Positions 2,306-54,094 of a DNA stretch of 64,000 nt are shown here, in pieces. The position numbers and the translations under genes were made by a program. Numbering within the stretch: position 1 is the stretch's first letter; each line of letters opens with the position of its first letter. The stretch spans positions 992,001-1,056,000 of the forward strand of contig CM068778.1 of the NCBI GenBank assembly GCA_035084275.1, in the 5' to 3' direction. The DNA is from Hydrolagus colliei. Its lineage: Eukaryota. Below the pieces are notes generated by a model. That model had not been told where the DNA came from and ran no database searches. It saw nothing but the letters and a program-made list of their open reading frames with translations.

Positions 2306-2692
<387 letters not shown>

Positions 2693-2720
2693 ACCATCCA
2701 CATGTTCCTGTCAAACCCAA

Positions 2721-5558: not shown

Positions 5559-5876
<318 letters not shown>

Positions 5877-5907
5877 ACGTCTCCCAGGTCAACACAAAAA
5901 CAACAAA

Positions 5908-5923
5908 GGCTCTTCTAAGAGCC
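5908..5923 (+). promoter_or_regulatory. Histone 3' stem-loop (H4)
   Basis: GGCTCTTCTAAGAGCC; HDE-like CAAAGGCTGT at ~5940. Confidence 0.93.
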
Positions 5924-6142
5924 GCCCAACCGCTCGTATCAAAGGCTGTAACCTCACAACTAAACTAACCTTGGCTGTGAGGGCTTTGTCCTGGATGACA
6001 GGATGAAGGAGACGTCGTATAAAGGTTGGTTTAAATGTATCACCTGCTATGATGTAAACACCGACAAATGATGTAGATAATCATATAGTCACATATATAA
6101 TGAAAACGGGTCAGAGGGATCTCTCTCTCTCTCTGTCTCTGC

Positions 6143-6522
6143 CTCCTGTCAATCACTGGGTACCAGGGAGACAGTGGGCGTGTTTCCCCGCCTCTCCTGT
6201 CAATCACTGGGTACCAGGGAGACAGTGGGCGTGTTTCCCCGCCTCTGCTGTCAATCACTGGGTACCAGGGAGACAGTGGGCGTGTTTCCCCGCCTCTCCT
6301 GTCAATCACTGGGTACCAGGGAGACAGTGGGCGTGTTTCCCCGCCTCTGCTGTCAATCACTGGGTACCAGGGAGACAGTGGGCGTGTTTCCCCGCCTCTG
6401 CTGTCAATCACTGGGTACCAGGGAGACAGTGGGCGTGTTTCCCCGCCTCTGCTGTCAATCACTGGTTACCAGGGAGACAGTGGGCGTGTTTCCCCGCCTC
6501 TCCTGTCAATCACTGGTTACCA
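6143..6522 (+). repeat. 51-bp minisatellite, 7 full units plus a partial
   Basis: Unit CT(C/G)CTGTCAATCACTGG(G/T)TACCAGGGAGACAGTGGGCGTGTTTCCCCGCCT; gives the 17-aa periodic ORFs in the track. Confidence 0.97.
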
Positions 6523-7019: not shown

Positions 7020-7196
7020 TATTCAAGACTGAGATTCATAGATTTTTTTGTCGATAAAGGGATTAACGGATATGGGGATAAGATGTGTAGGTGGAGTTAG
7101 AATAGATCAGCCATGATCTTATTGAATGGCGGGGCAGGCTCGAGGGGCCGAATGGCCTACTCCTGTTCCTAATTCTTATTGTCTTATGTTCTTATA
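7020..7196 (+). mobile_element. CR1-like LINE 3' end (family B, (TTCTTATG)n tail)
   Basis: ...GGCCGAATGGCCTACTCCTGTTCCTAATTCTTATTGTCTTATGTTCTTAT; same 3' UTR as the 45117 copy. Confidence 0.85.
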
Positions 7197-7616
7197 TATT
7201 TTAAAAAGTCATTTCAATCTATGACTGTTTGTGGGCCACTGCTGTGCGCAATTGGCTGCTGTGTTTTGCCCACATAGATACACATATAGTCAATTCACTT
7301 TACAGTATATTCTGTGAAGCGCTTTGAAAGTCCAGAAGATGTGAAAAGTGCAATATCAAACACGATTATTATTGTTAGTAGTATTATTATTACCCTACAA
7401 AATTGCCACATATCTCTTAAAACCATAACCTAATACAGTACAGTATATCCAGTACAATGAAATATCATGCTCCACTGTTGTTTCATACAGGGCTAACAGT
7501 AATATAATACAGAAATGTAATAGAGTAAAAATAGTATCATGAGAAGATAATAACAGTAATAAAGACAAAAATAATATTAACATTGAAACAATACTAAACA
7601 ACAACCAGCTCACATA

Positions 7617-7910
7617 CAACAACAACTTTGATTTATACAGCGCCCTCCACGCCGGACAGCGTCTCAGAGCGCTTCACAGTAGCGGACCCCGGGGACCGAG
7701 CCAGGGGCAGGAAGGTGACCAAAGGCGCGATCGAAGAGAAAGATCTTCAGCTGGGGGGGGGAGGGGGGGGGAGGGGGGGGAGTGAGGGAGGGAGTTCCTG
7801 AGCCTCGGGGTGTAGTGACTGAAGGCCTGGCTGCCGAGGGTGGAGCGGAGGATTCGGGGGGACATGGAGGAGGCCAGACCCGGGGGAGCGAAGGCAACGG
7901 GAGCTGGGGT
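7617..7910 (-). mobile_element. L2-like LINE 3' fragment
   Basis: Minus strand ends ...GAAGCGCTCTGAG...GAGGGCGCTGTATAAATCAAAGTTGTTGT; absent from the paralogous right-arm site (~53830). Confidence 0.75.
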
Positions 7911-8029
7911 GAGGAGAGAGGAGGCCAGAGAGGTTGGGGGGGGGGGGGGGGGGGGGCAGAGGGTACATCACCCTCCACACAGGATTACTGTATATCAGTG
8001 ATTAACATGGGGAGGGCGTGTGGGTGGGT

Positions 8030-8230
8030 CTCCCTCTCCTGTCAATCACTGGTAACCAGGGATACGTGGGTGTCTCACTCTCCTGTCAATCATTGGTTAC
8101 CATGGAGACAATGTGCGCGTAGGCAATGCGCGTCATCAAGCTGCGTCAACTAGTCACGTGATCAGTGTCTCCAATGGCGGCGAGAGGGTCACCGAGAAGA
8201 CAGGGTGATGGCTGTCTCTGTGCAGCTTGA
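8030..8230 (+). promoter_or_regulatory. CpG-rich promoter and probable non-coding exon 1 of the left ZNF gene
   Basis: Two CTGTCAATCA + X-box units (8036-8065, 8080-8109), NRF1-like TGCGCGTAGGCA, E-box TCACGTGA, YY1/initiator-like CCAATGGCGGCG, then GAG|GT and GA/GT microsatellites; paralog at 53545-53800. Confidence 0.65.
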
Positions 8231-8334
8231 GGTGCAGGGAGAGAGAGAGAGAAGGTGAGAGACAAAGGGAGAGAAGGTGAGAGAGAGCTAGAGAGAAGCT
8301 GGGGAAGTGAGAGAGAGAGTCTGTGTGTGTCTCC

Positions 8335-8365
<31 letters not shown>

Positions 8366-8444
8366 GCCTTCCCTGCAGGCGGTCCTGGTGTGAGGGTGAA
8401 TGTGGCTGTGTGAGAGTGTGTATGTCTATGTGTGTGTGTGTGTG

Positions 8445-8745
8445 AATCACCTTCAAGGCCATTCACAGCCTTGCCCCCACCTATCTCTCCGACCTGCTGT
8501 CTCGCCCGTCCCCTCCTTCTCTACGTCCACCGCCCTAAACCCCACCATCGGCGGCCGGGCTGTCACCCTCTCTGCTCCCACACTGAGGAACTCCATCCCG
8601 CAATCCCTTCGCCTCACTTCCTCCTTCAAGGCCGGTCTCAAGACCTTCCTCTTCGACCGTAGCATCTGCTCCCCTCCTAACTCTTCCCCCTCTCCTCTAT
8701 AAAGGTGCTCTATAAATGTAATTTTGTTGTTTTTGTTGTTGTTCT
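8445..8745 (+). mobile_element. L2-like LINE 3' fragment
   Basis: TCACCTTCAAGGCCATTCAC...CTGTCACCCTCTCTGCTCCC...AAAGGTGCTCTATAAATGTAATTTTGTTG; paralog at 49316-49480. Confidence 0.75.
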
Positions 8746-9639
8746 TAAGTGGCTGTGTGTGTGGCTGTGTGTGCATCTCCCTGACGCTCCCCTCTTGACT
8801 CCCTATAGGAGGTCCTGGTGTGAGGGTGACTATGGCTATGTGTGTGTCCGTAACCCCCCTTGCCTCCCAGTAGGGGGTCCCTATGTGAGGGTTAGTGTGG
8901 CTACTGTGTATGTGTGTGAGTGCGTGTGTGTGTGTCAAAATGAGTGTGAGAGTGAGTGTGCTTGTGTGTGTGTCTTCCTGAACCCCCACCCCTTGTCTCC
9001 CTATCAGACATCCTGGTGTGACGGTGAATGTGTCTGTGTCTCTGTGTCTGTGTGTGTCTCCCTGACCCCCCCATTGTCTCCCTGTAGGGGCTGCATTTGA
9101 CCATATGTTTGGCTGGTAACACATCAGGTATAAGTTTGTGCTGCTAACACAAGGCAGTAGAGAATGTCTGAGGAAACCCAAGCCAGCAACATGGAATGTG
9201 CGATTACCCCAGAGAAAGGTAACCACTCAATGTATCTGCACCTTACTGTATTTGCTTATTACTTAAATGTGCAGGCTGTGTTTATTTATAACTTGCCCAT
9301 GCATTGCTTGCATTTCGCCCACAATTATACAGTCAATTCACTTTACAGTATATTTTGTGAAGCACTTTGACACATCAATATGATGTGAAATGCGTTATAT
9401 CAAATGCAAGGATTATATAATTTGATATTTCCCTTTCACATCTTCTAGATGTCTCAAAACACTTCACAGGATCTACTGTAAAGCAAATTGACTGTATATT
9501 TGTGGACAAAACTCAGCAGCAAATCGTGCATAGCAGTGTCCCAGAATCAGCAGTGGAACAAAATGATCAATTTTTTTTTTTTTTAGCAATTATTGTAAGT
9601 AAATCTTCGAAGGAAGTAAGTAAACCTTTGTATGTGGCA

Positions 9640-10150
9640 GGGCAGTGAGATAAGGCTGTTTAAAAAAAAGCATACAGGATACTACGCTTTATAAATAGTG
9701 GCATTGAGTACAAAGGCCAGGAAGCTTTAATTAACCTGTATAATACTTGGTTTAGGCCTCAGTGCTGTGTTTTGATTCTGGGCACCACACTTTAGGAAGG
9801 ATGTTAAGGCCTTGGAAAGGATGCAGAGGAAATTCACTGGGAGGTTAGCAGGATTGAGGGACTTTGGTTATGAGAAAAGTCTACAAAGTCCAGGATTAAT
9901 TCTCATTGGAGCAGAGAACGTTACGAGGAGACCTGATAGAGGGTTTTTTCATGCAGCAAGTTGTTCGAATCTGGAATGAATTGCCTGAAAGGGTGTTGGA
10001 GGCTGATTTGATAACAACAAGTGGTGGGTAGTTATTTGGGGAGGAAAGGTTTTGTGGGGTTATTGGAAAAAATCCAGGGAGTTGGATTGACATTGAATAG
10101 TTCTTTTCAAAAAGCCAGCACAGACTCGATGTGCCAATATGCCTCACTTT
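9640..10150 (+). mobile_element. Degraded CR1 family A fragment (paralog 44935-47620, split by a family B insertion)
   Basis: Decayed ORF2 C-terminus (AGGCCTCAG...GGGCACCACACTTTAGGAAGGATG...GGAGACCTGATAGAGG). Confidence 0.75.
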
Positions 10151-10906
10151 AGCTGTAAAATCTATCAACCAGGTTCATACTTACTGCTCTGCAAACAGTG
10201 GCCTGTGGAGCGAGGAAACTTGTCTAAGGTTTTCCCTACCTGGGAATCAAGCCTGTGTTCTCTTGTGCAAGGTGCTAACCAATTTGATTAGGAACAATTT
10301 TATTTACTGTCTACAAAACTCAAACGTCTCTCAGCCTAAAGCTGTTAGTGTTTTCAGTTCTCTGTGTACATCACGTTTTTGAATTCTGTTCTTGTTATCG
10401 ATTTACTCCCTAGGTCCCTGCACTGCAAAGGGTTTGAGCTCCACACAGAATCAATTGACTGGAGGAGAGGCCGGGAGCAACAGATACGATTTCAGAAAGA
10501 GGGAGAGAAGAATTTATACTGAGGAAAAGGATCTTCGTGACGATGATTACCTGTGTGAGTGATAAATCAATCAGAGTTTCTGAACATAAATTGGCCCAGA
10601 ACAGAATTGGGCAGATGCTATTCTAGCACTTTGACCTCTCAAGTCAGGACGTGGTGGATTCAAGACCCTGCCCCCTCTAGCCCCACATTGTGAACAGTGT
10701 ATTTATAGGACAGTTGGCTGACATTGTCTATCCCCGTTGTTCTGGCTTCAATAGAGTGTCCGGTACAGAGGCAGCAGTGCAGGGAGTCAACATCTGGTTA
10801 TGGGAACATGGTTCTTCATTGGAAAGACAATTATGGCGTAATTTAAGAGAGTTTATAGGAATTAGAGATAGACAGACAGGAGAATCGGGAGATTCTCATT
10901 TGGAAA

Positions 10907-13404
10907 ATGCTGAGTAAAGATTTATTTGGTGAGTTTGGAAAATGGCGCTGGAAAGAGAGCATCGCACAGTGGATTTTGACCATTGGTTAGTTCAGGTGAG
11001 AAGTTTCAAAATGGCCACCGCTGTAGGGAGCTCCTCCCCTGTCCCACCCACTCCCAGCCATGACTCGGCACTTGGCTGGCGCTGACCGTCTGCTCTGGTC
11101 TGACCGATGTCCAGCACGGTTCTGAGACACGGGTTTCTGTGGATCAAACGCAAACAATAGTTATAGGAGTTTGAGAATTGACCAGATTAGCTTTATATTA
11201 AACACAAGTGTTTATTATTGTTCTTGATAAGGTTGCAGTTTCACAAGTTGAGGTTCACCCCATCCAGGGAGGTTACTTTGCTTTTAAATGTTTGTCACTT
11301 TTATTAGATGTGGATTTGATTCCTCAAAATGGACATTATAAATGTTCAGAGTAATAGCCTGGATCAGTTCAGCTGTATCACCGCCTTCAGGATATAGATT
11401 GTATTATAAGGCAGATGCCGCAGTCCAGCTACTGTGCTGGGGGGTGTGGTGGGGGGGGATCTTTAATGTCCACCTGAACAGACATGGCTGGGGAACTTGG
11501 CTGAACATTTCGTCAGAAGTGCGGCAACTCAGACAATGGAAAGCATTCCCCACGTGAATATAAATTTCTACAGTTTCCTGGCCAGGCATCCACTTCACTA
11601 AATATTCAGGCACCTGGTGGCTGTTTGTGAGAAGCTTCTTCCAAAAACTGACACAGTCATATACTGACCTGTATGAAATGTGCTATATAAATGCAATCTA
11701 CAGTAGAGGCCCGTTTATCCGTGACCTGATCTACCACATTGCTCGGCCCCGTCCCGGGGCAATTCCCTATTCCAGCAATCGCGAGTATGTTCACAGTGCG
11801 CATGCGCGCTTATTAAACTTATAAACTTAGAGGTTTTTACCAATTGGTTAAAAAATGCTTTTTACAGAGTGTGCTGGAATCTTTATTGATATGTAGCCAC
11901 ACAATATCCTGTTACTATTTAGTATATTATTAACATAGTATGTTTTAATATAAATATTTTTTTTGTGCTGGGTTTTCGGCAACTTGCCGCCTGTTTATCC
12001 GGCACAGTCAATTAGTCAACACCCCCACCCCCCCAAGCGTGCCGGATAAACAGGCTGTTACTATATTATTGACCCACATTTGACAGTAATTACAGTAAAG
12101 CATTGTTTTTGTCAGGTATTCGACAAATGCAAGGAATTATTGATTAAACAGCGATTGCTAAAGAATACACTCACATGTCTGTCTTTTATACAGATCTTTC
12201 TTGTTTCCCATTAGCAGCCAAACTAGATGATTCTGAGGCTATCCCTTGGCCTCAGTATAACACTGCGTTTACTCGAGCTGAGTTTCATCAGAAACACAGC
12301 AGAAGACATCCCGAGCCCCGAAGAGGCACATCGGCCACACAACCAGATTGTACGGTAAATCTTTTTTCACAGCCAGACACAGGTCATGGATCCATCAGAT
12401 GTATTGTTGAAGAAAAGGGGGTCTCGCAAACAAGATCTTCGCGGGATCATCTGCCATCGATCTCAAAAGAGAGACTGTATGACTGTTCCCAATGTGGGAA
12501 GAGCTTCACACATTCAGGATCCCTCCACAGACACCAGCGATCACACACAGGAGAGAGACCATATAAATCTGTTGAATGTGGAGAGACATTCACAATACCA
12601 GGAAGCCTCCACATCCACCGTCGATCACACACAGGAGAGAGACCATATAAATGTGCTGAATGTGGAAAGAGTTTCACAAGGTCATACACTCTCAATGTAC
12701 ACTATCGATCACACACAGGAGAGACACCATATAAATGTGCTGAATGTGGAAAGAGTTTTACAGGGTCGGGATATCTCCGGGTACACTATCGATCACACAC
12801 AGGAGAGAGACCGTATAAATGTTCTGAATGTGGAAAGAGTTACTCAACATTGGGGAGTCTCCAGGTACACTATCGATCACACACGGGAGAGAGACCATAT
12901 CCATGTGCTGAGTGTGGAAAGAGTTTCAAAACATCAAACGATATGAACGTACACCATCGATCACATACGGGAGAGAAACCGTATAAATGTGCTGAATGTG
13001 GAAAGAGTTTCACATCGTCGGGGTATCTCCGGGTACACTATCGATCACACACAGGAGAGAGACCATATAAATGTTCTGAATGTGGACTGAGTTTCTCAAC
13101 TTTGGGGCATCTTCAGGTACACTATCTATTACACACAGGAGAGAGACCATATACATGTGCTGAGTGTGGAAAGAGTTTCAAAACAGCAGGGGAAATGAAA
13201 ATACACCATCGATTACATTCAGGAGAGAGACCATACACATGTGCTGAATGTGGAAAGAGTTTCAAAACATCAGGGGATATGAAATCACACCATCGATCAC
13301 ACACGGGAGAGAAACCATATAAATGTGTTGAATGTGGAGTTAGATTCACAAGGAAACAGCACCTCCAGAGTCACCAGGGAATACACACACGAGAGACTGT
13401 ATAA
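10907..13404 (+). CDS. C2H2 zinc-finger protein, 11 fingers (finger 2 has C>S); model: exon 10907-10928 (MLSKDLF) spliced to 12215/12218-13404
   Basis: Tandem CxxC-12-HxxxH repeats with TGE(R/K)PY linkers in ORF 12175..13404; phase-1 donor TTTG|GTGAGT and phase-1 acceptor TTTCCCATTAG|CAG are conserved in both paralogs. An unspliced start at ATG 12175 remains possible. No KRAB domain seen. Confidence 0.9.
11701..12063. mobile_element. Tc1/mariner (pogo/Tigger-like) MITE
   Basis: TIRs CAGTAGAGGCCCGTTTATCCG / CGGATAAACAGGCTGTTACTA, TA duplication on both sides, empty site (AATCTA^TTATTGAC) in the right arm near 42640. Confidence 0.85.
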
Positions 13405-14249
13405 CTGGGCAGATTGATCCAACACCATTGACTCACAGTTACGTCACCGATACGACAGTTTCTCCTCTTCTATCCTGAACTTGGGTTGTCCACAGATCCT
13501 TGCACACAACTGGCTGTTGTGCATCTGTCAGGTTAGCACCTGCTGGAGAGATTAACAGAATGGTTCAGTGAGATGTGAGAGCCAGTGTGTCCCACTGACA
13601 CTGGGTGTGATTCCATTACCATAGCTCATATCACTTCATTATCAATAGTAGGTCAAAAGGCACCTCTCCCAGTTGATTGCCAGCAGAATGGGGTGTTTGT
13701 GCTGGCTTCTTACCAACCAGTTTACCAGCTTAATATCAATCAGCATTTTTTGTTTTTAACGGTAAAGTTGGATGGTGGATGGGGTGTGATTGTTGCGGGA
13801 GGGGAATGTATGTGCTTGTGGGAAGAGGTGGGGGTGTTGGTGAGGGATGTTCATGTGTATTTCAGGGGAAAGGGGGTTTGTCGTGTGTGGCGGAGGGATA
13901 TTAAAATGTGGGAAGGGATAATAATTTGTGTGTTGGTGGTAAGAGCTGAAGTGAGTAGTTAAATGGTGGGAGGGTATATTAATCTGTATGATGCTTTTAA
14001 CCATATTGATAAGGCACTGTCAATGCTTACTGTATGGGACATCCTCCCGACGTGAAATCCGCTAAACAAATGTAATTTTTTTGTTGTTGTAATGTTTCCA
14101 TGACTAATATTAAAGCCATCGACATGGAATACCGAGGGCTGGATTCCCTATTTAGAAGATGTCCACAGGCCGCATAAGGAATGTGTTTTGCTTCCAAAAC
14201 CATGACAACATTGACACAACACCGTTTTTACGTCAGTTCTCAAACTGCT

Positions 14250-14620
14250 CAACACTGCCAGCTGAACTCCCGAGCTGGGGAGGGAACAGCAGAAGGTGGG
14301 ATGGTTAAAGGGTTACCAGAAGCACAGACAAACAGTCGAAAGAGTTGATGTGCTTTAAATGAGGGTTGGGATGGAAATTGAGTGGAGCAAAATGCTCATG
14401 TTGTGGCAAATGGGGTTGGGGTACATGAAGAAAGCCAGTGTTTCCTCCTTCAAGTCCTGCCTCAAGACCCTCCTCTTCGATGACCCCATTGGCCACTCCA
14501 AATCCCTTTTGCTTCAACCTCCCTGTCCCCAGCTCACGTCTGAAATAATGACTCTCCAATGCCTTGTGACGTCCTCTGAGTGAAAGGCGCTATACAAGTG
14601 TAATTGTGTTGTTGTTTCCG
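14250..14620 (+). mobile_element. L2-related 3' fragment (paralog ~39460-39830)
   Basis: TCCTCCTTCAAGTCCTGCCTCAAGACCCTCCTCTTCGA...GAAAGGCGCTATACAAGTG(T)n-like tail. Confidence 0.65.
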
Positions 14621-14734
14621 GGTGAAGGGAGGGGCCAGGTAGGGAGCTCGCTGAGGTGCGGTGGGAATGGGCAAAATGATGATCTCACTCAAATAATTAC
14701 TTCAAATAATCACCAAAAAGTGATTATTTGAAGG

Positions 14735-16160
14735 TGGCAGGACAGGTAGACAAGGCTGTTTTTTTTTTTAAAAGCGTACGGGATACAAGGGATAAATAGG
14801 GGCATAGAGTACAAACGTCAAGAAGGTCTGACTAACCTCTATAATACTTTGGTTAAGCCTCAGCTAAAGTACTCTGTTCAATTCTGGTCACCACACTTTA
14901 GGAAGGATTGGAAAAGCATTGGAAAGGGTGCAGAGGAGATTTACCAGGATGGTACCAGGAATGAGGGATTTCAGTTATGAGGAAAGGCTAGCGAGGCCAG
15001 GTTTATTCTCGTTCGAGCAGGGAAGGTTATGAGGAGACCTAATAGAGGTTTTCAAGATCAAGATTGTTATTGCTTTTGTTGTTTCTTGTTGTTGTTTGAT
15101 TCCCCACACCCTTGCCCCCCCAGCCTCCCACCCCCCTCTTTTTCCCTCATTCCCTTTTCCCCCTTTCTTTTCCCCTTCCCTCCCTGTTCCCCCTTATCCC
15201 CTTTCTCCCTGATTTTAACCCCCAACCACCTTTCCCTCCCTCTCTCCCCTTAGCCCCCCTTCCCCTTCCTGATTTTACCCCACCTTTGCCTCCCTCTCCC
15301 CTCTTTTCCCCCTTTCTCCCCTGGCCCCACTTCCGTGACTGTTTGTAGGACACTGCTGCTGCATTTCAGCCACAAATATAGCGTCAGCTTTTCTGCTCTC
15401 CTTCCCCTTACCCCAGCCCCTCCCATTATCCTCTTTTCCCCAAACCCCACTTCCACGACTGTTTGTGGAACACTGTTGGACGCAATTTGGCTGCCGCGTT
15501 TCTTCCACAAATATACAGTCAATTTCCCCCCCCCCCCGCTCCGGTCGCAACCTTGGGACGTTGTTGTATTCTGTGAAGCGCTTTGAGACGTTGATAAGAC
15601 GTGGAAAGTGTTATATCAATGTAAGGATTTTTTATTGTATTTATTATATTATTATGATGGTATTCTACAGAGTAAACAGGAAAAACAGGATCTCCCTGGT
15701 GGGTGTATCAGTGACTTGTGGCCACAGATTTCAAATACAGTAGTTTCAAAAAGAAGCAGAGGGGAGGTGAGCAGAAATTTTTTCAACCAGTGAGTTGTTC
15801 AATCAATTAATCAAGCAATCAATGAATGAATCAATGAATGAATCAGTCCAAACTTACATTTATATAACGCCTTTCACATCGAGAAGACGTCCCAAGGTGT
15901 TGTACAGTTAGGTTGGGACAAGAGCAGGGGTCGGGGCAGGACAAGGAAGAGTTGAAAAATTGACTATATTGTTCAAATCTGGAATGCATCTCCTGAAAAG
16001 GTTGTGGAGACTTTTAAAAGAGAGGTAGACATTTATTTGGGGTGGACCGGTTTGCAAGGTTATGGGAGAGATCTGGGGAGTGGGATTGAATGGCTCTTTT
16101 CAAAGAGACGGCACAGACACGATGGGTCTAATGGCTTCCTTTTGTGCCATAAGATTCTAT
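14735..16160 (+). mobile_element. Degraded CR1 family A 3' part, interrupted by C-rich/SINE insertions (paralog 38688-39360)
   Basis: GCAGGACAGGTAGACAAGGCTG...GGAGACCTAATAGAGG (14735-15058), AAAAACAGG...CCACAGATTT (15680-15795) and 3' UTR ...GCCATAAGATTCTATG (15965-16160). Confidence 0.7.
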
Positions 16161-16230
16161 GAAAACAGCACCATTTGCCTTTGCTCATCCGTGTCCTCGA
16201 AATCCTTTGCTTCACCATCAGTGTCCGTGC

Positions 16231-16681
16231 TAGGGTCCATCGATATGGAAATTTTCCGATTGAGATATATCGATGGGCTCACATCGAGATACACTGAAAT
16301 ATCGATATTTTCTGGGTTTTCGTACTGCACATGCACACGCGTCGCGAGGTGTGCGCGCATTCAGGGCTTATCTCCTCAGGAGGTAAATATCTCTCTCTCT
16401 CTGTGTCTCTCACATTCACTCTCTCCATCTCTGTGTTTTTCTGTCTGTGTCTCTGTGTCTCTCTCTCTCACATCCCCATCTCTATCTATCTATCTGTATA
16501 TTATCACATCCACCCCGTCTCCCCACCCACCCCCGTCTGTCCTCCCGCCGCCGTCCGTCTCCGATTTTTTTCGATATATCAACTTTTTGGATACATCGGC
16601 ATTTCGAAAATACTGTACCGACATATCGATATAAGAATTATATCGGATATAACCGATATATTGATATATCGCTGGACCCTA
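16231..16681. mobile_element. hAT-family MITE with perfect 8-bp target-site duplication
   Basis: TIRs TAGGGTCCATCGATAT / ATATATCGCTGGACCCTA; GTCCGTGC at 16223-16230 and 16682-16689; absent from the paralogous L2 in the right arm (~38585). Confidence 0.93.
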
Positions 16682-16689
16682 GTCCGTGC

Positions 16690-16905
16690 CTGCAGCCACT
16701 ACGCCCCGAAGTTCCGAACTCCCTGCCTCGCTCCCTTCACCGAGCCACTCTTTTCATAGTTTCAGGTCTCGGCTGAAGAACTTTCTTTTTGACCGCGCCT
16801 TCAGTCACCTTTTCCCCCCCTGCCCGTGGCTCGGTCCCTTGATCCGTTATTTGAAGAGTTCTGAGATGCTGTCCAGCGTGGAGGGCGCTATATAAATTTA
16901 ACTTG
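16690..16905 (+). mobile_element. L2-like 3' fragment (host of the hAT MITE; begins ~16165; paralog 38340-38680)
   Basis: CAGCCACTACGCCCCGAAG...GAGGGCGCTATATAAATTTAACTTGTTG. Confidence 0.7.
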
Positions 16906-18524
16906 TTGTTGTTTACCCCCTCTCTTGCCTTCTTCAAGTCTCTTCTAAAGACTGTCCATTTCAACCTTGTGTGAGCTGGGGGCATCGAATCAATAAAGAT
17001 CAGGGCGCGGGGCGCAAAATAGGCCAGTGCCCGCCATGTGGAGGAACAGCTTTGAGTTAAGACATGAAGTCCGCACACACTAACAGCAGCTTTGTATTTC
17101 AGGATGGCCGTGTGGCCTTCCTTGACCTGGTGCTTGTGTGGGCTGAACAGGAAGAGGAGAGTCAAGCCAACCTGGTGAGTTTCAGACCCAGAGACTCAGT
17201 GAGCTACTGCACAGCCGGGTGTGGAGACTTGACATTCTCCAGCCCAATCCTATCATGTCTTCAGACAGAAGTGGTCGCCAGGGCCATGCCAGCGGCTATC
17301 ACACCTTCGAGATGACTCAAAGCTCTTCACAGACTATACAGTATAATGTAAATTTAATTGCCTGTAGATTTTGTGGGCGAAATTGAGAGCACTGAGCAGA
17401 ACTCACAAGGCCCAGGACATCTGCCGATCCATTAAATGCAACAACCCAAATAGTTTGCTTCACAAGCACAGCATTGGGAAGATTGACAAGCGTCTGTTGG
17501 TTTACACACAGCAAAATCCCCTTTTCAAAGGTATTTTTAAAATTAAAATAACTTTATATCAGCCTTGATTTTTATTTTATTTATAGTAGGATATGAGGCC
17601 CGACAGCTTTTGAACTTTTTATGGCTAATCCTCGACTTTGTGTCTGCTGCAGGTCAAGCGTATCTCAGCTAAGAGGGAGGAGGAGAAAAGCAGGTAAAGG
17701 TTTTAAAATGCCCCGATCTCCGCAAACCCAAATCCTTGTGTCTCCAATTGTATGTTTCTACTCTCAGCTTTCAAACACTGCTCAGAAACACTTTGTCCTC
17801 ATACCATGGCTGTCCCATGCTCAGTGCTCCCAGTATCTGTGTAAAACTTTTTGTGTCTAATATTGACATCTAATATTAACAAAATAATCCTTGCATTTGA
17901 TATAGCACTTTTCACATCTTATCGACATCTTAAAGCGCTTCACAGACTATACTGTAAAGTGAATTGACTGTATATTTGTGGGCGAAATGCCACAGTCAAT
18001 TGCGCACAGCAATATGTTGATAACGGAACAGAATTCCCCCCCTAAAAAGCAGGGCCAGTCACTGTGTTACTGACGGTCGGAGGGAGCCGGCAATGTACAG
18101 AGCAGTGTAGGCAGTGGTGGCCGGTAACATCTCAGCCACGTCCAACACAAAACCATGTCTCACTCATACACTCCCTGTCATCTGTCATCTCGCTGCTGGG
18201 AGTCTGGATTATAATACTTATGATATTAATCCTTCCATATGATGCAGCGCCTTATCATGTCATTTCAGACTTCTCAAAGCGCCATTAACCCAAATTATTC
18301 TCACTCACCTTCTGTGCGTTTGGAATTCCTCCCGACGTGAAAGGCGATACACAAATGTCATTTGTTGTTATTGTTGTCTGCTGGGTGTTGGAGGGCCGTG
18401 TGTCTGACCCCCTGACTGGGAGCCAGGCTGAATGACAATCCATTCCTCTCTCAGGAAGAAGAAACAATAATAATTATAATAATAATCCTTGCATTTGGTA
18501 TAACGCTTTTCACATCTTCTAATC

Positions 18525-18848
18525 CTGTCATTCACAACCTTGGGTCCCAACCCAAATCAGGGTCACAAGGATCCTCAGTAGGTTCGCGAAGGGTCATCAG
18601 AAATGTTGTCCTTTTTTTCCTTTTTTTTATGTTGAAAATGCTGTTTAATGCTGAGCAGTGGCCCAGGCGTCACCGCCCACCAATTTGAATGAAAGATCGT
18701 ACCAGCGAGTTGCGCTGAGGCCACAAAAGAGAAGGAGATATCATCTTGGCTGAACTTCGCTTGAGTCACGTCCTCGCCCCCTAAGGGTTGGGGGGACTTG
18801 TCGGTGGCCAATCTAGGGTCGCAGCAAAAAAAAGTTTTGGAACCACTG
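18525..18848. mobile_element. hAT/Charlie-like MITE
   Basis: Right end ...AAGTTTTGGAACCACTG (CAGTGGTTCC TIR), degenerate left end, flanks TTCTAATC/TTCTAGGG resembling the NTCTAGAN target; partial copy at ~36550-36735. Confidence 0.55.
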
Positions 18849-19081
18849 TTCTAGGGTCTCAAAGCGCTTCACAGAATGTACTGTAAAGTGAGTAGATTGT
18901 ATAGTTGTGTTGCGAAAGGCTGTGTCGCCACATTGTTAAAAACAACTTATTGCCGCCAAGCCGTAGTTTATAGATAAGACACTAACTTACTTCAAAATGT
19001 TAATTACTGTAACAATGTTAAACGGGTGCAAATAAAGGAATGTGCAACATAGTATCAGGTGAACCGCTGTTCTACACTACT

Positions 19082-19369
19082 GTGTCTCAAAGCGCTTCAC
19101 AGAATATAGTGTAAAATTAATTGACAGTATATTTGTGGGCAAAACGCGGCAGCCAATTGCACACAGCAGTGTCCCACAAACAGATATGGATTAAAATGAC
19201 CAATTTTATTATTGTGTGTTTTCAGGACAGATTTTTATTAGGCATATCTGTGTCTGTGTGCGCATGGAGTAAGGAAACTTACCCAATGTTTCACCCTGAC
19301 CTGCCTGAATTCGAAACACGGGTCTCACACTTACAAGCCGAGTGCTCTAACTACTGAGCTACAGGACTC
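19082..19369 (-). mobile_element. tRNA-derived SINE with L2-like tail
   Basis: Minus strand GAGTCCTGTAGCTCAGTAGTTAGAGCAC (A box)...GTTTCGAATTC (B box)...TGTGAAGCGCTTTGAG. Confidence 0.85.
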
Positions 19370-20109
19370 AGCTACATGTGAAAATTGCTATATGTAATGA
19401 AATGATGATTGTTATTATTATTATAATCTTCTGAAGAACATTGAAACTTCCCAAACAGTTTATAAGGCAATATACCAAACAAGAGAATAGTACTATTTTT
19501 ATTACGAATATTATGCTGATAAGTTTTAAGCGATCGCACTAATGGCAGAAAAAGAATGGCCACAACAAAATACTTATTTAATATCAACGATAGCATTTAA
19601 TATCATCTATCCTTATCAGATCACTAAAGTGTCACAAAGTGCCTTACAGTTATTACTGTAGACTGTGTGAATCGGTACAGAATCAAACATAAACACAGGG
19701 AGAATGCGAGTCCCTTTGGAATATATTAGGTGGTTGATGAACCATAAATTATCTTTGCTTAGTAGATCAGCAATTCTAAAAATATGCTTGGATTTGATAA
19801 AGTGACCTATCACATTGTACTGGTGTCTCTAAGCGCTTCACGGAATATATTGTAAATCCCGTGACTGTGTGTTTTTGTGGGGGGAAAAGCTGGCAGCCCA
19901 TTCGCACATCACTGTTCCACATACAATTTGTGGATTGAGAGACTGTTATTATTACTATTTTTTGAATATTTGGACAGATATTTTACCCCAGCAAAACTGA
20001 TCTGCCAATTGACTAATAAGCGGACTGTAAGGCGAGTGCTCTAATCACTGCACTATCAAACTCCACAGCCTCTTTTCACCACCCTCCGTGTTATAATTGT
20101 ATAATCAGT

Positions 20110-20490
20110 GAGAGCTCAGGGTATGTGGATGTGTGAACTGTGTGTAAACTGTGTGTGTGTGTATGGCAGAGTGTGAGCTGAGGGTATGTGTGGGTGTGAG
20201 TATGAGCTGGGGGTGTGTATGTGGGTGAGTGTGAGCTGACTGGGTATGGTTGAGTGTGAGCTCAGGGTGTGTGGATGTGTGAACTGTGTGTAAACTGTGT
20301 GAGCTGAGGGTATGTGTGGGGGTGAGCATGTGCTGGGGGTGTGTATGTGGGTGAGTGTGAGCTGTGTGTGTTTGCATGGGTGAGTGTGAGCTAAAGGTGT
20401 GGGTGGGTGAGTGTGTATGCGTGGGAGAGTGTGAGCTAGGTGTGAGTGTGTGCATGTGTATGAGCGTGGGTGAGTGTGAGGCCAGCCTGA
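20110..20490 (+). repeat. GT-rich compound repeat with recurring GTGAGTGTGAGCTG (paralog 35720-36010)
   Basis: Direct inspection; produces low-complexity His/Thr ORFs. Confidence 0.85.
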
Positions 20491-20835
20491 GAGCTAGGAC
20501 AGGACTCTCTGCGATTTTGGATTCCAAAACATGTTCAGCTCTGGTGGGAGGGTAAAGGGCAGTGACTGTGTGTTTGGAGTAAAGTGTAGTGACTGTGTGG
20601 TTGGGGGAGGATAATATGTAGTGACTTTGTGCTGGGGGGGATGGGTAAAATGCACTGAGTGTGTTTGCGTGGAGGATAAAGTGTAGTGACTGTGTGTTTG
20701 GTGTCTCTCTCTCACACGTACACACAGTGGGACAGACTGATGGGAGAGGAATCAAGAATGACATATTTAATAACCAGTCACTACAGTGTACAGAATGTAT
20801 TACATTACACACTGTGTGGACAGTCACGGCCTTGG

Positions 20836-21256
20836 TCACGATCTCACAAACACTCTCAGCCCAGCTCTGAACACCTGCAGTGATTCCAGCTGATTCTTTC
20901 CATCTGAACTGAACTTATTCCCCTCCAGCCTGAAAAAGCAAATAAAGACCTGATCACCATATAAACTGGAAACTGTTCATGGCATTGTTTATTCAATCAA
21001 TCAATAAATAAATGGCCTCAAACTGGTTCCATTCTGACATCCAGCCCTGTTCTCTCGGTGTGTTTATCACATTAAACAATGACACAAACACTCACCAGAT
21101 CCTCTCCAGGTTGGTGTAGGTCAGTATGAGGTGGCGCAGAGTGGGGACACAGGTGTCTGTGAAGGAGCTAGACCCCAGTCCCAGCCTCCTCAGTGAGCGA
21201 CTTGTACTGAGAGCGGAGACCAGATCATCAGTGCAGCCATTGGTCAGCCAGCCAGC
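20836..21256 (-). pseudogene. NLR (NACHT-LRR) gene 3' remnant: last LRR exon (21096-21256, 161 nt, frameshifted) and terminal exon (20836-20929)
   Basis: LTNGCTDDLVSALSTSRSLRRLGLGSSSFTDTCVPTLRHLILTYTNLERIW|GTGAGT and TTTTTCAG|G LEGNKFSSDGKNQLESLQVFRAGLRVFVRS*; no NACHT exon found in the window. Confidence 0.8.
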
Positions 21257-24009: not shown

Positions 24010-24079
24010 GATCCATTGTGCCATGGAGACAGTGGATCCATTGTGCCATGGAGACAGTGGATCCATTGTGCCATGGAGA
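24010..24079 (+). repeat. 25-bp tandem repeat, ~2.8 units
   Basis: GATCCATTGTGCCATGGAGACAGTG x2 plus GATCCATTGTGCCATGGAGA. Confidence 0.92.
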
Positions 24080-29095: not shown

Positions 29096-29264
29096 NNNNN
29101 NNNNNNNNNNNNNNNNNNNNNNNNNNNNNNNNNNNNNNNNNNNNNNNNNNNNNNNNNNNNNNNNNNNNNNNNNNNNNNNNNNNNNNNNNNNNNNNNNNNN
29201 NNNNNNNNNNNNNNNNNNNNNNNNNNNNNNNNNNNNNNNNNNNNNNNNNNNNNNNNNNNNNNNN
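29096..29264. other. Assembly gap (169 N) within a CA-rich tract
   Basis: Run of N. Confidence 1.
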
Positions 29265-29359: not shown

Positions 29360-29486
29360 CCTCTCGAGCCACCGCCGCCAACAGTCAACACGCATGTGAC
29401 TCCATGACGCTATGTACTGCGCGCCTGAATGGGGAGTGGGGGGGACCGACCACTGTCTCCCTGGCAACCAGTGATTGACAGGAGAG
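29360..29486 (-). promoter_or_regulatory. Promoter-like segment with one CTGTCAATCA + X-box unit
   Basis: Minus strand CTCCTGTCAATCACTGGTTGCCAGGGAGACAGTGG followed by CpG-rich GGCGCGCA...TTGGCGGCGG. Confidence 0.55.
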
Positions 29487-31080
29487 CGGATTCCTTCACT
29501 GATCCTGTTATCCTGGAGTGTGGCTACAACTACTGTCACTCCTGTATCACTCAGAGCAGGAGACAAATGCCGGAATGTCTGCAGATTGTTGCCGAAGGGA
29601 ACCTCAGGGTGAATCGAGCCCTGGTCAGAATGGTAGAGAAAGCTCAAGAATTCAGCCTGACTCCGCCACAGACAGGAATCAAACCTCACTGTGAGAAACA
29701 CAGCGAGGAACTCAAGCTGTTCTGTGAAACTGATAATAAATTGCTGCGTGTGGTTTGCAGTCATGGGCGAAAACAGAGGTCACAGTTTCCTGCCCATCGA
29801 TGAAGCTGCTGAAATCTACAAGGTAACAATACCCACTTCCCAGGCCATTCATTCATGTCTCTACTTTATATTTTCAATTTTCACACATTTATTCCTTGTG
29901 TTTGTTCCAGGATAAAGTGAAATCCTCCTTAGCCTCTCTCACACAGAGGGAGGAAACTGCTGTACAAGTTCAAGTCAAACAGAGAGAAAAGATCTCACAA
30001 GTGAAGGCAAGTTGTATCGGGGCTGATGTCTGTGCTCTCAGTGTATGTCTCCCTTTACTGTGTGTAGATGGTGTGATGTCTCTGTGTGTCTCCCTTTACT
30101 GTGAGTGCACGGAGTGATGCCTTGTGTCTGTATGTGTATGTGTCTGTACCATGTGATGCCTGATATTCTGTGGGAACAGGTGAACAGTCTCCAGAACCAG
30201 ATCACGGCTGATTTTGCTAAGCTGCGCCAGAGTCTGACTGACAGAGCAGCGGGTGATGGGAGAGCTCAGGCAGCGAGACGGGGAGATTTTACACCAAATG
30301 GAAAGAAATCTGCGAGAGATTCAGGACCACTTACATTCTGTTCAACAAGAACTCTCCGAGTTACAGAAACAGGTGGATTACACTTGTGATAGACACAGCA
30401 TCTCACACCAGGCTGACGTCCCAAGACGCTGGAGACTCACTGTTTCAGATCTGAGCTGGGGAGGGAGGGAGGGAAGCTAAAAGGGGGCATTTGGGGTGAC
30501 TAAGGGGACCGCTGAAGAGGAGGGTGATGGGGTGGGACTTGAAGGAGGTGAGGGACGGGGGGTGGGGGGGGGGGGGGGGGAGGGAGGAAGGCCAGGGAAG
30601 GGGTGAGGTGGAGGGAGGGGGGGAGGCAGAGGGCCAGTGGGATGGAGTTTATATCTCAAGTTTCTAACCATTTGGAGACAATATTGAGTGAGTAACGTTG
30701 CTGTGATAATGAAAGTAAACTTTGTTTTATGGAATTCTATTCTGTGACTGAGTTTACAATGCGGTGTCTCAGTGTCAACTCACATCTCTCTCTCTCTCTC
30801 TCTGTTTGTCTCTCTCTCTCTGTGCTTGATTTCATCAGGAGGAATCTGTGCTGAAGAAAAGGTATGAAATGTTCCTGATTTTAAAAAAATCCCATAATTT
30901 AATACACAAACAAAACACAACAGTGTGTGGTTTCACTTTATGACGTGAATGTGTGTTATTTCAGGATCAGTGATCAGGATTTTACGCTGTCAGTGTGTGA
31001 GGGTGATCTGTCTGTGGGGATATGCAAAGGGCCTGTACACTACACAGCCTGGAGACAGATAATACACGGCATCAGCGAAG
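29487..31080 (+). pseudogene. TRIM (RING-B-box-coiled-coil, TRIM39/69/A33-like) pseudogene lacking its start and PRY/SPRY
   Basis: DSFTDPVILECGYNYCHSCITQ (half RING), CEKHSEELKLFCETD (B-box), exons of 96 nt (29911-30006), a truncated coiled-coil exon (30174-~30372), 23 nt (30839-30861) and 116 nt (30965-31080, KGPVHYTAWRQ); 2-bp frameshifts near 29773 and 30243; GG instead of AG/GT at 30172 and 31081. Confidence 0.88.
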
Positions 31081-31087
31081 GGAGTGA

Positions 31088-31626
<539 letters not shown>

Positions 31627-35135: not shown

Positions 35136-35422
35136 TTACTGACCAGCACCAACCTGGAGAGGATCTGGTGAGTGTTTGTGTCATTGTTTAAGGTGATAAA
35201 CACACCGAGAGAACAGGGCTGGGTGTCAGAATGGAACCAGTTTGAGGCCATTTATTTATTTATTGAATAAACATGCCATGAACAGTTTCCAGTTTATATG
35301 GTGATCAGGTGTTTATTTGCTTTTTCAGGCTGGAGGGGAATAAGTTCAGTTCAGATGGAAAGAATCAGCTGGAATCGCTGCAGGTATTCAGAGCTGGGCT
35401 GAGAGTGTTTGTGAGATCGTGA
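35136..35422 (+). pseudogene. NLR 3' remnant (last ~33 nt of the LRR exon plus terminal exon 35329-35422)
   Basis: CACCAACCTGGAGAGGATCTG|GTGAGT and TTTTTCAG|G LEGNKFSSDGKNQLESLQVFRAGLRVFVRS*. Confidence 0.78.
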
Positions 35423-40380: not shown

Positions 40381-40726
40381 GGAGCTCCTGTGGCTCAGTG
40401 GTTAGAGCACTTGTCTTGCAAGCTGGGGAGACCAAGCTGGGGAGACCTGTGTTCGAATCCAGGCAGGCCAGCGCGAAACCTTGGGCAAGTTTCCTTACTC
40501 CACACGCCTAATAATAATCCATGAAAAAAAACACTATAATAAAAAAATTGGTCATTTCAATCCACGACTGTGTGTGGGACACTGCTGTGTGCAATTGGCT
40601 GCCGCGATTCGCCCACAAATATATACAGTCAATTCACTTTACAGTATATTCTGTGAAGCGCTTTGGGATGTCACTAAGATGTGGAAAGCGCTATATCAAA
40701 TGCAAAGATTATTATTATTATATTAT
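40381..40726 (+). mobile_element. Full-length tRNA-derived SINE, right-arm specific
   Basis: Same subfamily as 25940-26289 (shares the CTGGGGAGACC duplication); flanked by TAAAAC on both sides; empty site near 13725. Confidence 0.9.
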
Positions 40727-41215
40727 AAAACTGGTTGGTAAGAAGCCAGGACACACCCCATTCTGCTGCCAATCAATGGGGAGAGGTGCCTTTTGACCTA
40801 CTATTTATAATGAAGTGATATGAGCTATGGTAATGGAATCACACCTGGTGTCAGTGGGACACACTGGCTCTCACATCTCACTGAACCATTCTGTTAAGCT
40901 CTCCAGCAGGTGCTATCCTGACAGATGCACAACAGCCAGTTGTGTGCAAGGATCTGTGGACAACCCAAGTTCAGGATAGAAGAGGAGAAACTGTCGTATC
41001 AGTGACTTAACTATGAGTCAATGGTGTTGGATCAAAGGGCTCTCTGCACGGAATGCATCAATCTATTATTGTTATTGTATTCTATTTCCTCAAAGCAGCA
41101 TTTTTGAGCTTCGAAATGTATCTTCTCCTGGAAAGCATTCAAGTAGGAAAGGCACCTTTCAGAGCATTATTTTTCTGCTGATCAGACCACGCAAGTCTTC
41201 CCACAATCCACCCAT

Positions 41216-43766: not shown

Positions 43767-43876
43767 TTTCCAAATGAGAATCTCCCGACTCTCCTGTCTG
43801 TCTATCTCTAATTCCTATTAACTCTCTTAAATTACGCCATAATTGTCTTTCCAATGAAGAACCATATTCCCATCAC

Positions 43877-53138: not shown

Positions 53139-53544
53139 CTGTGGGACCTCCTGTAGGGGGATAAGACACTCACACCAGGACCTACAGGGAAGTGAGGGGG
53201 GTGGTCAGGGAGACACACACAGACTCTCTCTGTCACTTCCCCCAACTTCTCTCTCTCTCTCTCACCTTCTCTCCCTTTGTCTCTCACCTTCTCTCTCACC
53301 TTCTCTCTCTCACTCTCACCTTCTCTCCCTTTGTCTCTCACCTTCTCTCTCTCTCTCACCTTCTCTCTCTCACTCTCTCTCACCTTCTCTCACCCTCTCT
53401 CTCACTTTCTCTCACTCTCTCTCGCCTTCTCCCACTCTCTCTCTCTCTCTCACTTTCTCTCACTCTCTCTCGCCTTCTCTCACTCTCTCTCTCTCTCACC
53501 TTCTCTCACTCTCTCTCAGCTTCTCTCTCTCTCTCTCCCTGTAC

Positions 53545-53800
53545 CTCAGGCTGCACAGAGACAACTCTCACCTTCCCGTCTCTGTCGCCGCCATCGGGGA
53601 CACTGATCACGTGACCTGTTGACGCAATTTGATGACGCGTCTTGCCTGCGCGCACCGTGTCTCCAATGGTAACCAGTGATTGACAGGAGAGTGGGAAACC
53701 CGCGTTTCCCTGGTAACCAGTGATTGACAGGAGAGAGAAACCCGCGTTTCCCTGGTAACCAGTGATTGACAGGAGACGGAGACCCACCCACACGCCCTCC
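53545..53800 (-). promoter_or_regulatory. Promoter and probable exon 1 of the right ZNF gene, with three decamer/X-box units
   Basis: GGTAACCAGTGATTGACAGGAG at 53668, 53712 and 53754; E-box TCACGTGA; homologous to 8030-8230. Confidence 0.65.
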
Positions 53801-54094
53801 CCATGTTAATCACTGATACAGTCCTGAGTGGAGGGCAATGGGAGCAGGTTGTATTGTTAAGTATTGGTTATCACTGTGAATATTATTTTTGTCTCTATTA
53901 CTGTTATTATCTTATCTCTCTCATATTAGTGTTAAATTATCACATTTGTATATTACATTATTATGTTACTATGTTGTCATTCTATCACATATTGCTATTA
54001 CTAGATTATTATCATTATTACCCACATACACAACAATTGATGTTATGTATCACCCTCCAAGCATGATATTTCATGGTATATACTGTACTGTATT

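What the first reader, a model, noticed from the sequence alone, without database searches (positions are those of the whole stretch)
6143..6522. 51-bp tandem array that is an amplified transcription-factor module (PBX/PREP decamer + RFX X-box + GC box)
Seen: every unit has CTGTCAATCA (reverse complement TGATTGACAG), CT, then GG(G/T)TACCAGGGAGAC, then GGGCGTGTTTCCCCGCC. The same composite with identical spacing occurs singly or in 2-3 copies at the ZNF promoters and at 29455-29486. Only the last 1.5 units have the better GTTACC half-site. Established: TGATTGACAG is the PBX-PREP/MEIS decamer and GTTRCC..GGAGAC/GGCAAC is an RFX X-box. Inference: a promoter module tuned by tandem copy number (1, 2, 3, ~8), here 220 bp downstream of H4; a possible VNTR-encoded super-promoter, enhancer or factor sink.
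Basis: partly seen in the sequence, partly recalled or inferred. Interest (0 to 1): 0.7.

Follow-up and report, generated by a model that had tools for sequence, protein, structure and literature searches.

The report
Minisatellite built from a promoter module
A 51-base unit carrying a perfect PBX-PREP binding decamer is repeated 7.5 times just after a histone H4 gene; it is a young amplification of one copy of an old module from nearby zinc-finger promoters, and nothing here shows it works as a promoter.

Summary
Window 6143-6522 is a 51-bp x 7.5 tandem array at 98% identity. Each unit has an exact TGATTGACAG decamer (the PBX:PREP "DECA" site) followed 2 bp later by GG(G/T)TACC..GGAGAC. All 14 DECA sites in the window carry this arrangement (0.2 expected).

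The unit belongs to a small local family:
- two and three copies in two paralogous ZNF promoter-like regions (8039/8083; 53772/53730/53686);
- one copy at 29426-29489;
- a DECA-less relative at 24010-24079.

The family is old: units are 50-65% identical outside DECA. DECA is invariant (p about 0.001), so it is probably a working site in those promoters. The array itself is young, and only the module was amplified. It has no shared core promoter and its CpG content is at background.

The "X-box" fails the vertebrate RFX consensus in all 14 copies. Six of the seven full array units carry a T>G change in the better half-site. The GC box is not conserved between lineages. The identical spacing reflects common descent, not independent recurrence.

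The best reading is a promoter-derived minisatellite that probably binds TALE factors. Interest is modest.

The parts
6143..6522 (+). 51-bp x 7.5 tandem array. It has 8 exact DECA decamers (CTGTCAATCA on +) at 6146 + 51n. Units 1-6 have GGGTACC; units 7-8 have GGTTACC. Unit 8 is truncated after GGTTACCA.
8027..8113 (+). P1: two module units (DECA at 8039 and 8083, period 44) of the promoter-like region upstream of ZNF1. The proximal unit has ATTGG (a CCAAT core) made by a C>T change.
8114..8260 (+). P1 core promoter-like stretch: TGCGTCA (CRE-like), CACGTG (E-box), CCAATGGCGGCG (CCAAT / YY1-like), then GA-rich sequence with AAGGTGAG donor-like sites. This part has no counterpart next to the array.
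   Evidence: CpG o/e 0.60
53659..53784 (-). P2: three module units (DECA at 53772, 53730, 53686; period 42), the paralog of P1 in the inverted duplication. The distal unit is duplicated relative to P1.
53540..53658 (-). P2 core promoter-like stretch with the same motif order and distances as P1 (TGCGTCA +60, CACGTG +73, ATGGCGGC +92 from the last DECA).
   Evidence: CpG o/e 0.81
29426..29489 (-). S3: single module unit, the closest relative of the array unit (about 82% over 60 bp, including the spacer). It has GGTTGCC. It abuts a 5'-truncated, frameshifted TRIM RING/B-box exon, and an assembly gap lies about 160 bp downstream.
24010..24079 (+). 25-bp x 2.8 perfect tandem without a DECA. It shares the 14-mer CCATGGAGACAGTG with the 3' half of the module.
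5565..5923 (+). Histone H4 coding sequence (5565-5876) and its 3' stem-loop (5908-5923). This is context: the array starts 220 bp after the stem-loop.
7194..21126 (+). Left arm of the inverted segmental duplication (right arm 54231-35137), carrying P1 and ZNF1. The array lies about 670 bp outside it, so ZNF2 has no array.
   Evidence: ZNF ORFs

Best explanation
The array is a young minisatellite. It was made by tandem amplification (replication slippage or unequal exchange) of one 51-bp copy of an old cis-regulatory module. That module belongs to a local family of zinc-finger-gene promoters in this chimaera-like fish.

Shown:
- The module family has a conserved core, CT.CTGTCAATCA.TGG...CCA.GGA.AC, while the rest has diverged to 50-65% identity.
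- The two-unit structure of the ZNF promoters predates the inverted duplication.
- The array units are 98% alike.
- Only the module was amplified, not the core promoter.

Inferred:
- In the ZNF promoters the decamer is a working PBX:PREP (TALE) site kept by selection.
- The array therefore offers eight high-affinity TALE sites 1.5 kb upstream of the ZNF1 promoter and 220 bp behind H4. It may act as a weak enhancer or a factor-binding platform.
- Its expansion is most simply mutational rather than selected. The amplified variant has a damaged second element, and a DECA-less relative at 24 kb has also expanded in tandem.
For: - Array anatomy.
- Family membership: all 14 DECA sites carry the second element. 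The alignment of 8 lineages has DECA at 10/10 invariant columns against 13/30 for the other module columns, hypergeometric p = 0.00135.
- Orthology: P1a matches P2a/b and P1b matches P2c at 83-85%. Distal and proximal units are only 57-61% alike, and the array unit is 50-65% like all the others. So the module is old and the array is recent.
- Flanks: the array flanks have no homology to the P1, P2 or S3 flanks beyond GT-rich simple sequence. The CRE-like / E-box / YY1-like core is present in P1 and P2 at the same distances and absent after the array.
- CpG o/e: 0.41 in the array against 0.45 for the window, and 0.60-0.81 at P1 and P2.
- DECA is an established Pbx:Prep site, often near TSSs and seen with Sp/Klf and NF-Y motifs (PMC6023610).
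- Recurrent tandem change in the family: 2 versus 3 units in P1 and P2; a 25-bp x 2.8 perfect tandem at 24010-24079 shares the module's 3' 14-mer.
Against: - There are no expression, chromatin or population data, so a function as promoter or enhancer is not excluded.
- The sequence after the array has a CRE-like GACGTCA at +106 and GGTGAG donor-like sites at +136/+141, so a new first exon is conceivable.
- Invariance of DECA could partly reflect gene conversion among copies rather than selection.
- The genome-wide distribution is unknown. Four or five sites in 64 kb could also mean a dispersed repeat.
- The copy number rests on a single assembly.
Confidence: 0.58

Rival explanations
1. One reading: the array is a selected, copy-number-tuned regulatory device. 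It would be an alternative or super-promoter, or a strong enhancer for ZNF1 (or H4), or a TALE/RFX factor sink, with activity scaling with the number of units.
For: - Eight perfect DECA sites.
- Same strand as the ZNF1 promoter-like region P1 and 1.5 kb upstream of it.
- A copy-number series of 1, 2, 3 and 7.5 within one family.
- DECA is constrained in the family.
- DECA sites are associated with active chromatin near TSSs in zebrafish (PMC6023610).
- CRE-like and donor-like motifs lie downstream of the array.
Against: - No core-promoter homology.
- CpG o/e is at background.
- The amplified unit carries T>G in the better half-site of the second element.
- Unit periods of 42, 44 and 51 bp show no conserved helical phasing.
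- The paralog ZNF2 does without an array.
- A DECA-less relative also amplified in tandem, which points to a mutational tendency.
Confidence: 0.2
2. The module is part of a dispersed repeat: a transposon regulatory region or a satellite family. The ZNF promoters would then have captured it or be built from it, and the array would be one locus of that repeat.
For: - There are four to five sites in 64 kb.
- S3 ends exactly at a breakpoint inside a TRIM exon.
- S3 and the array have no obvious gene downstream.
- The region is rich in LINE and SINE fragments.
Against: - No shared flanks beyond the module among the array, S3 and P1/P2.
- No transposon protein or terminal repeat is attached.
- The missing 5' part of the TRIM exon is not found on the other side, so there is no insertion signature.
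- P1 and P2 were copied as part of a 14-kb segmental duplication, not as an element.
Confidence: 0.1
3. The conserved core of about 30 bp is read not by PBX:PREP plus RFX but by one long-footprint factor. That could be a multi-finger ZNF, perhaps one encoded by the neighbouring 10-12-finger genes acting on its own promoter. The array would then be a binding array for that factor.
For: - The conserved columns run past what DECA and an X-box need (CT.CTGTCAATCA.TGG...CCA.GGA.AC, then ARTG).
- The X-box consensus is not met.
- The adjacent genes encode 10-12 C2H2 fingers.
Against: This is conjecture. The decamer is an exact match to a well-established dimer site. No specificity prediction or binding data were obtained.
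Confidence: 0.05
4. The copy number, or the array itself, is an assembly artefact: a mis-expanded or collapsed repeat.
For: Tandem repeats are error-prone in assemblies, the window has two N runs, and reads could not be consulted.
Against: The array has ordered internal variants (C/G at position 3; G/T in the last two units) and unique flanks. That pattern is typical of real sequence spanned by long reads.
Confidence: 0.05

Closest known systems
PBX:PREP (TALE) DECA sites, TGATTGACAG, at promoters and early-embryo regulatory elements (Ladam et al. 2018, PMC6023610; earlier in vitro work by Chang 1997 and Knoepfler & Kamps 1997, cited there)
   Same: An exact 10/10 decamer in every copy. It sits at promoter-like regions (P1, P2). 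A GGGCGTG / GGGTG Sp/Klf-like motif is nearby in some copies, and an ATTGG (CCAAT core) is in the proximal units of P1 and P2. These are the two partner motifs reported at zebrafish DECA peaks.
   Different: Known DECA sites are single, conserved sites. Here the site is embedded in a 42-51-bp unit that repeats in tandem, up to 7.5 times. The array units have no CCAAT. Binding was not tested.
RFX X-box, GTNRCC(0-3N)RGYAAC (consensus as given in PMC5752003)
   Same: The left half GTTACC / GTTGCC / GTAACC fits GTNRCC in 8 of 14 copies. The centre CCA(T/G)GG resembles the CCATGG centre of palindromic X-boxes. One copy (8096-8109) fits the nematode pattern GTHNYYATRRNAAC, which I recalled from memory.
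   Different: The right half is GGAGAC, GGATAC or GGAAAC, scoring 4-5 of 6, so no copy meets the consensus. Units 1-6 of the array also lose the T of the left half. The only consensus met is a loose one that occurs at chance rate here and that its authors call non-predictive on its own (PMC2375033).
Promoter minisatellites / VNTRs that carry transcription-factor sites, such as the MAOA uVNTR and INS VNTR in humans and the unstable promoter repeats of yeast (Vinces et al. 2009). These are cited from my own knowledge.
   Same: Head-to-tail units of tens of bp, high identity, located beside a promoter, each unit containing a factor site, and copy number differing between paralogous loci.
   Different: Polymorphism among individuals and any effect on expression are unknown here. 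The array lies 1.5 kb from the nearest promoter-like region rather than inside it.
MHC S-X-Y promoter module (RFX5 X1 box + CREB X2 box + NF-Y Y box)
   Same: P1 and P2 contain an X-box-like element, a GCGTCATC / TGCGTCA CRE-like element and, in P1, a CCAAT, in that order.
   Different: The distances do not fit. The CRE-like site is about 18-30 bp from the X-box-like element instead of abutting it. There is no S box. The array has none of these but the X-box-like part. I considered this module and rejected it.

Membership tests
Minisatellite / VNTR | Head-to-tail tandem copies of a 10-100-bp unit with high identity | tested here: met
   Period 51, 7.5 copies, 98% matches, no indels.
Minisatellite / VNTR | Copy number varies among individuals | not testable with these tools
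The only indirect sign is that paralogous promoters differ, with 2 versus 3 units.
PBX:PREP DECA site | [quoted passage not shown] | tested here: met
   14 exact matches against 0.22 expected, 8 of them in the array. Definition from PMC6023610.
PBX:PREP DECA site | Occupied by TALE factors in vivo or bound in vitro | not testable with these tools
   No ChIP or EMSA data. The indirect sign is that DECA is invariant in 8 lineages that are 50-65% alike elsewhere, p = 0.00135.
RFX X-box | Match to GTNRCC(0-3N)RGYAAC | tested here: not met
   0 of 14 module copies match. The only 2 matches in the window lie elsewhere. Consensus from PMC5752003.
RFX X-box | Match to a relaxed X-box consensus (GYTRYY N1-3 RRHRAC) beyond chance | tested here: inconclusive
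   6 module copies match, including 1 of the 7 full array units. The consensus is found 11 times in the window against 8.2 expected.
Sp/KLF GC box as a fixed part of the module | GC box conserved at the same place in all module lineages | tested here: not met
   GGGCGTG is in the array only. The same columns read GGGTGT in P1a, GGGTTT in P2a/b and GGTCGG in S3.
RNA polymerase II promoter (of the P1/P2 type) | Core elements downstream of the module (CRE-like, E-box, YY1-like, first-exon donor) | tested here: not met
   Present at matching distances in P1 and P2. After the array there is only one GACGTCA and GGTGAG motifs, and no alignment beyond simple sequence.
RNA polymerase II promoter (of the P1/P2 type) | CpG-island-like composition | tested here: not met
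   Array CpG o/e is 0.41 against 0.45 for the window. P1 is 0.60, P2 0.81, H4 0.77. This is a weak test for a young repeat.
RNA polymerase II promoter (of the P1/P2 type) | Transcription start or open chromatin at the site | not testable with these tools
Transposon-borne or satellite repeat | Copies share flanks or a consensus beyond the unit, or carry TE features | tested here: not met
   Within this window only, there are no shared flanks and no insertion signature. The genome-wide test was not possible.

The most novel reading that the evidence does not exclude
A lineage-specific promoter grammar of chimaera zinc-finger genes: a TALE decamer locked 2 bp from a second, so far unassigned conserved element (TGG...CCA.GGA.AC-ARTG, not a canonical X-box). 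Its dosage would be set by tandem copy number. The 7.5-copy array would be a working, copy-number-variable TALE-dependent enhancer or alternative promoter at the border between a histone cluster and a ZNF cluster.
Probability: 0.15. Interest if true: 0.55.

Novelty: new member of a known kind. Interest (0 to 1): 0.3.

Why it matters
If the array is only a promoter-derived minisatellite, it is a clear but ordinary example of how factor-binding modules get copied in tandem in fast-evolving gene clusters.

It becomes more interesting if the copies are active. Eight perfect PBX:PREP sites next to a ZNF gene, with a paralog (ZNF2) that lacks them, would form a natural experiment on site dosage. The conserved second half of the module would then be a candidate new partner site for TALE factors in an early-branching vertebrate.

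The within-family footprint (DECA invariant while everything around it drifts) is usable evidence that DECA sites work in cartilaginous-fish promoters.

Tried and rejected
- **Reads and RNA evidence.** There is therefore no expression, TSS or copy-number check.
- **Same-genome paralogs and orthologs.** Three protein searches with the ZNF1 exon were swamped by generic C2H2 proteins or found nothing.
- **Callorhinchus milii.** The one homolog (P0040) was fetched as L001. It has no module even at 2 mismatches. Its two DECA strings sit in GA-rich low-complexity sequence.
- **Scyliorhinus.** The homolog was not on record.
- **H4 look-up.** It returned 10 H4 loci from unrelated public assemblies with no module.
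- **Metagenome scan.** A scan for the composite gave one hit on a 2.3-kb contig that looks bacterial, consistent with chance.
- **Scan notebook.** There were no look-alikes by sequence or relatives. One unseen note on "RFX half-site array" exists on another piece of this genome.
- **Literature.** No paper links TGATTGACAG with RFX in a meaningful way. No RFX-PBX or RFX-PKNOX pair appears in the held text or tables of the 2025 CAP-SELEX study, though several tables are cut. The exact 14-mers occur only in a Xenopus Foxm1 regeneration study and its preprint, which I did not open.
- **Coding rival.** ORFs run through the array in several frames only because the unit lacks stops. Only one Pfam hit reaches its cutoff, marginally (a bacterial MvaT silencer domain, 27.3 vs 27 bits, no separate stretch), and I take it as an artefact of the repeated peptide.
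- **RNA-gene rival.** No Rfam family lies on the array.
- **Hairpin-driven structure.** The single-strand fold z-score is only -3.
- **S-X-Y module and CTCF, RUNX, EBF look-alikes.** I considered these by eye and dropped them for wrong spacing or poor matches.
- **Transposon insertion at S3.** The missing TRIM 5' part is not found on the other side.

Full report
**What is there**

Window 6143-6522 (+) is a clean 51-bp tandem array of 7.5 copies with 98% matches and no indels. Each unit reads: DECA decamer on the complementary strand (CTGTCAATCA), CT, GG(G/T)TACCAGGGAGAC, AGT, GGGCGTGTTTCCCCGCC. Only two positions vary:
- C/G at unit position 3;
- G (units 1-6) versus T (units 7-8) in GG(G/T)TACC.

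The last unit stops after GGTTACCA. The array begins 220 bp after the 3' stem-loop of an intact histone H4 gene (ORF 5565-5876, stem-loop 5908-5923). It lies 1.5 kb upstream of a ZNF promoter-like region, on the same strand.

**More than chance, but not independent**

Exact TGATTGACAG occurs 14 times against 0.22 expected. All 14 are followed at 2 bp by GGKWRCC, where 0.00 are expected. One-mismatch decamers are at background.

The sites are not independent, though. A self-comparison shows an inverted segmental duplication, about 7194-21126 against 54231-35137. Each arm carries a C2H2 zinc-finger gene whose last exon encodes 10-12 fingers. Each arm also carries a promoter-like region:
- P1 has DECA at 8039 and 8083, period 44.
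- P2 has DECA at 53772, 53730 and 53686, period 42.

LINE reverse-transcriptase ORFs explain the longer distance from P2 to ZNF2. The single copy at 29426-29489 (S3, minus strand) aligns with the array unit over about 60 bp, spacer included. The "same composite with identical spacing" therefore reflects descent from one ancestral module, not repeated invention.

**An old module with a conserved core**

I aligned eight lineages: array units 1 and 7, P1a, P1b, P2a, P2b, P2c and S3. The invariant core is CT.CTGTCAATCA.TGG...CCA.GGA.AC.

Outside DECA the identities are as follows:

| Comparison | Identity outside DECA |
|---|---|
| P1a vs P2a/b | 83-85% |
| P1b vs P2c | 85% |
| Distal vs proximal promoter units | 57-61% |
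| Array units vs all others | 50-65% |

So the two-unit promoter structure predates the inverted duplication, and the array's progenitor is an old lineage. All ten DECA columns are nevertheless invariant, against 13 of the 30 other module columns (hypergeometric p = 0.00135). This is a within-family footprint. The decamer is very probably under purifying selection in these promoters, although gene conversion could contribute. Independent work establishes the decamer as the Pbx:Prep dimer site. In zebrafish it is often found within 5 kb of TSSs, with Sp/Klf-type and CCAAT motifs nearby (PMC6023610).

**A young array that copied only the module**

Array units are 98% alike, whereas P1 and P2 differ by 12-18% in this region. 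The flanks of the array share nothing with the flanks of P1, P2 or S3 except GT-rich simple sequence and TE fragments.

P1 and P2 continue into the same ordered core: TGCGTCA at +59/+60, CACGTG at +72/+73 and ATGGCGGC at +91/+92 from the last DECA, followed by AAGGTGAG donor-like sites. After the array there is only one GACGTCA (+106) and GGTGAG motifs (+136/+141).

CpG o/e is 0.41 in the array, 0.45 for the window, 0.60 at P1 and 0.81 at P2. The array lies about 670 bp outside the duplicated segment, so ZNF2 has no counterpart. The unit periods of 42, 44 and 51 bp show no conserved helical phasing.

**The second and third elements**

The vertebrate X-box consensus is GTNRCC(0-3N)RGYAAC (PMC5752003). 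No module copy meets it. The left half is good in 8 of 14 copies. The right half is GGAGAC, GGATAC or GGAAAC.

Six copies fit the relaxed fly consensus GYTRYY N1-3 RRHRAC. That pattern occurs 11 times in the window against 8.2 expected, and its authors state that such matches are not predictive alone (PMC2375033). Six of the seven full array units carry G instead of the T of GTNRCC, so the amplified variant is the one with the weaker site. That argues against selection for RFX binding in the array.

Conservation also extends beyond an X-box, into ...GGAGACARTG. A separate perfect tandem at 24010-24079 (25 bp x 2.8) has no DECA but shares the 14-mer CCATGGAGACAGTG (0.15 matches expected). The 3' half may therefore be an element of its own with an unassigned reader. 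Tandem amplification also recurs in this sequence family with or without the decamer.

The GC box GGGCGTG is specific to the array lineage.

I found no published RFX-TALE composite.

**Rivals**

- A selected, copy-number-tuned promoter or enhancer remains possible at about 0.2, but it has no positive evidence beyond the sites themselves.
- A dispersed-repeat origin (about 0.1) is not supported inside the window. It could not be tested genome-wide.
- Coding and RNA-gene readings were rejected.
- An assembly artefact is unlikely given the ordered variants and unique flanks, but it was not checked against reads.

**Limits**

- The collections reachable by DNA pattern do not hold vertebrate genomes. 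The one related chimaera locus I could fetch (C. milii, L001) has no module.
- N runs (1533-1660 and 29096-29264) were left as they are.
- The organism is taken from earlier scan notes ("chimaera-like cartilaginous fish"). I did not verify it.

**Verdict**

This is a real, promoter-derived minisatellite carrying eight perfect TALE decamers.
- Its motif reading is right for DECA, weak for RFX and lineage-specific for the GC box.
- Its "super-promoter" inference is untested and, on the anatomy, less likely than a recent mutational expansion.
- Interest is modest (0.3). It is a new member of a known kind.

Noticed in passing
window 2306-2701 (+) and 31040-31435 (+): The H2A-like gene has an in-frame TGA at codon 3 (MS*RGK...). 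Its 96%-identical copy at 31 kb has a scrambled N-terminus with a stop. Both look like pseudogenes (or sequence errors) beside intact H4 and an H3-like ORF.
   Followed up: partly
window 29487-29820 (+): A TRIM RING + B-box exon is cut off at its 5' end exactly at the edge of module S3, so the first Cys pair of the RING is missing. It is also frameshifted before ...GENRGHSFLPIDEAAEIYK. It looks like a pseudogene fragment joined head-to-head to an orphan promoter copy.
   Followed up: partly
window 8083-8100 (+) and 53659-53686 (-): The TSS-proximal units of P1 and P2 each contain ATTGG (the CCAAT / NF-Y core), made by different mutations: C>T in CAATCATTGG, and a T insertion in CCATTGGAGAC. 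NF-Y is the reported partner of TALE factors at DECA sites, so this may be convergent.
   Followed up: partly
window 24010-24079 (+): A perfect 25-bp x 2.8 tandem (GATCCATTGTGCCATGGAGACAGTG) shares a 14-mer with the 3' half of the module but has no decamer. It sits in an AT-rich, non-promoter-like context.
   Followed up: partly
window 7194-21126 vs 35137-54231: A large inverted segmental duplication (about 80-95% identity) carries the two ZNF genes. The right arm is inflated by LINE insertions with RT ORFs at 45203-46426 and 50477-51832.
   Followed up: partly
window 6000-6100 (+): TATA-like strings (GTATAAAGG at about 6009, TATATAA at about 6094) lie between the H4 3' end and the array. Their meaning is unknown.
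   Followed up: no
window 9072-9085 (-) and 49107-49120 (+): One-mismatch copies of the module's 3' 14-mer (ACAGGGAGACAATG) lie at corresponding positions in the two arms of the inverted duplication, about 1 kb downstream of P1 and, across inserted sequence, about 4.5 kb downstream of P2.
   Followed up: no
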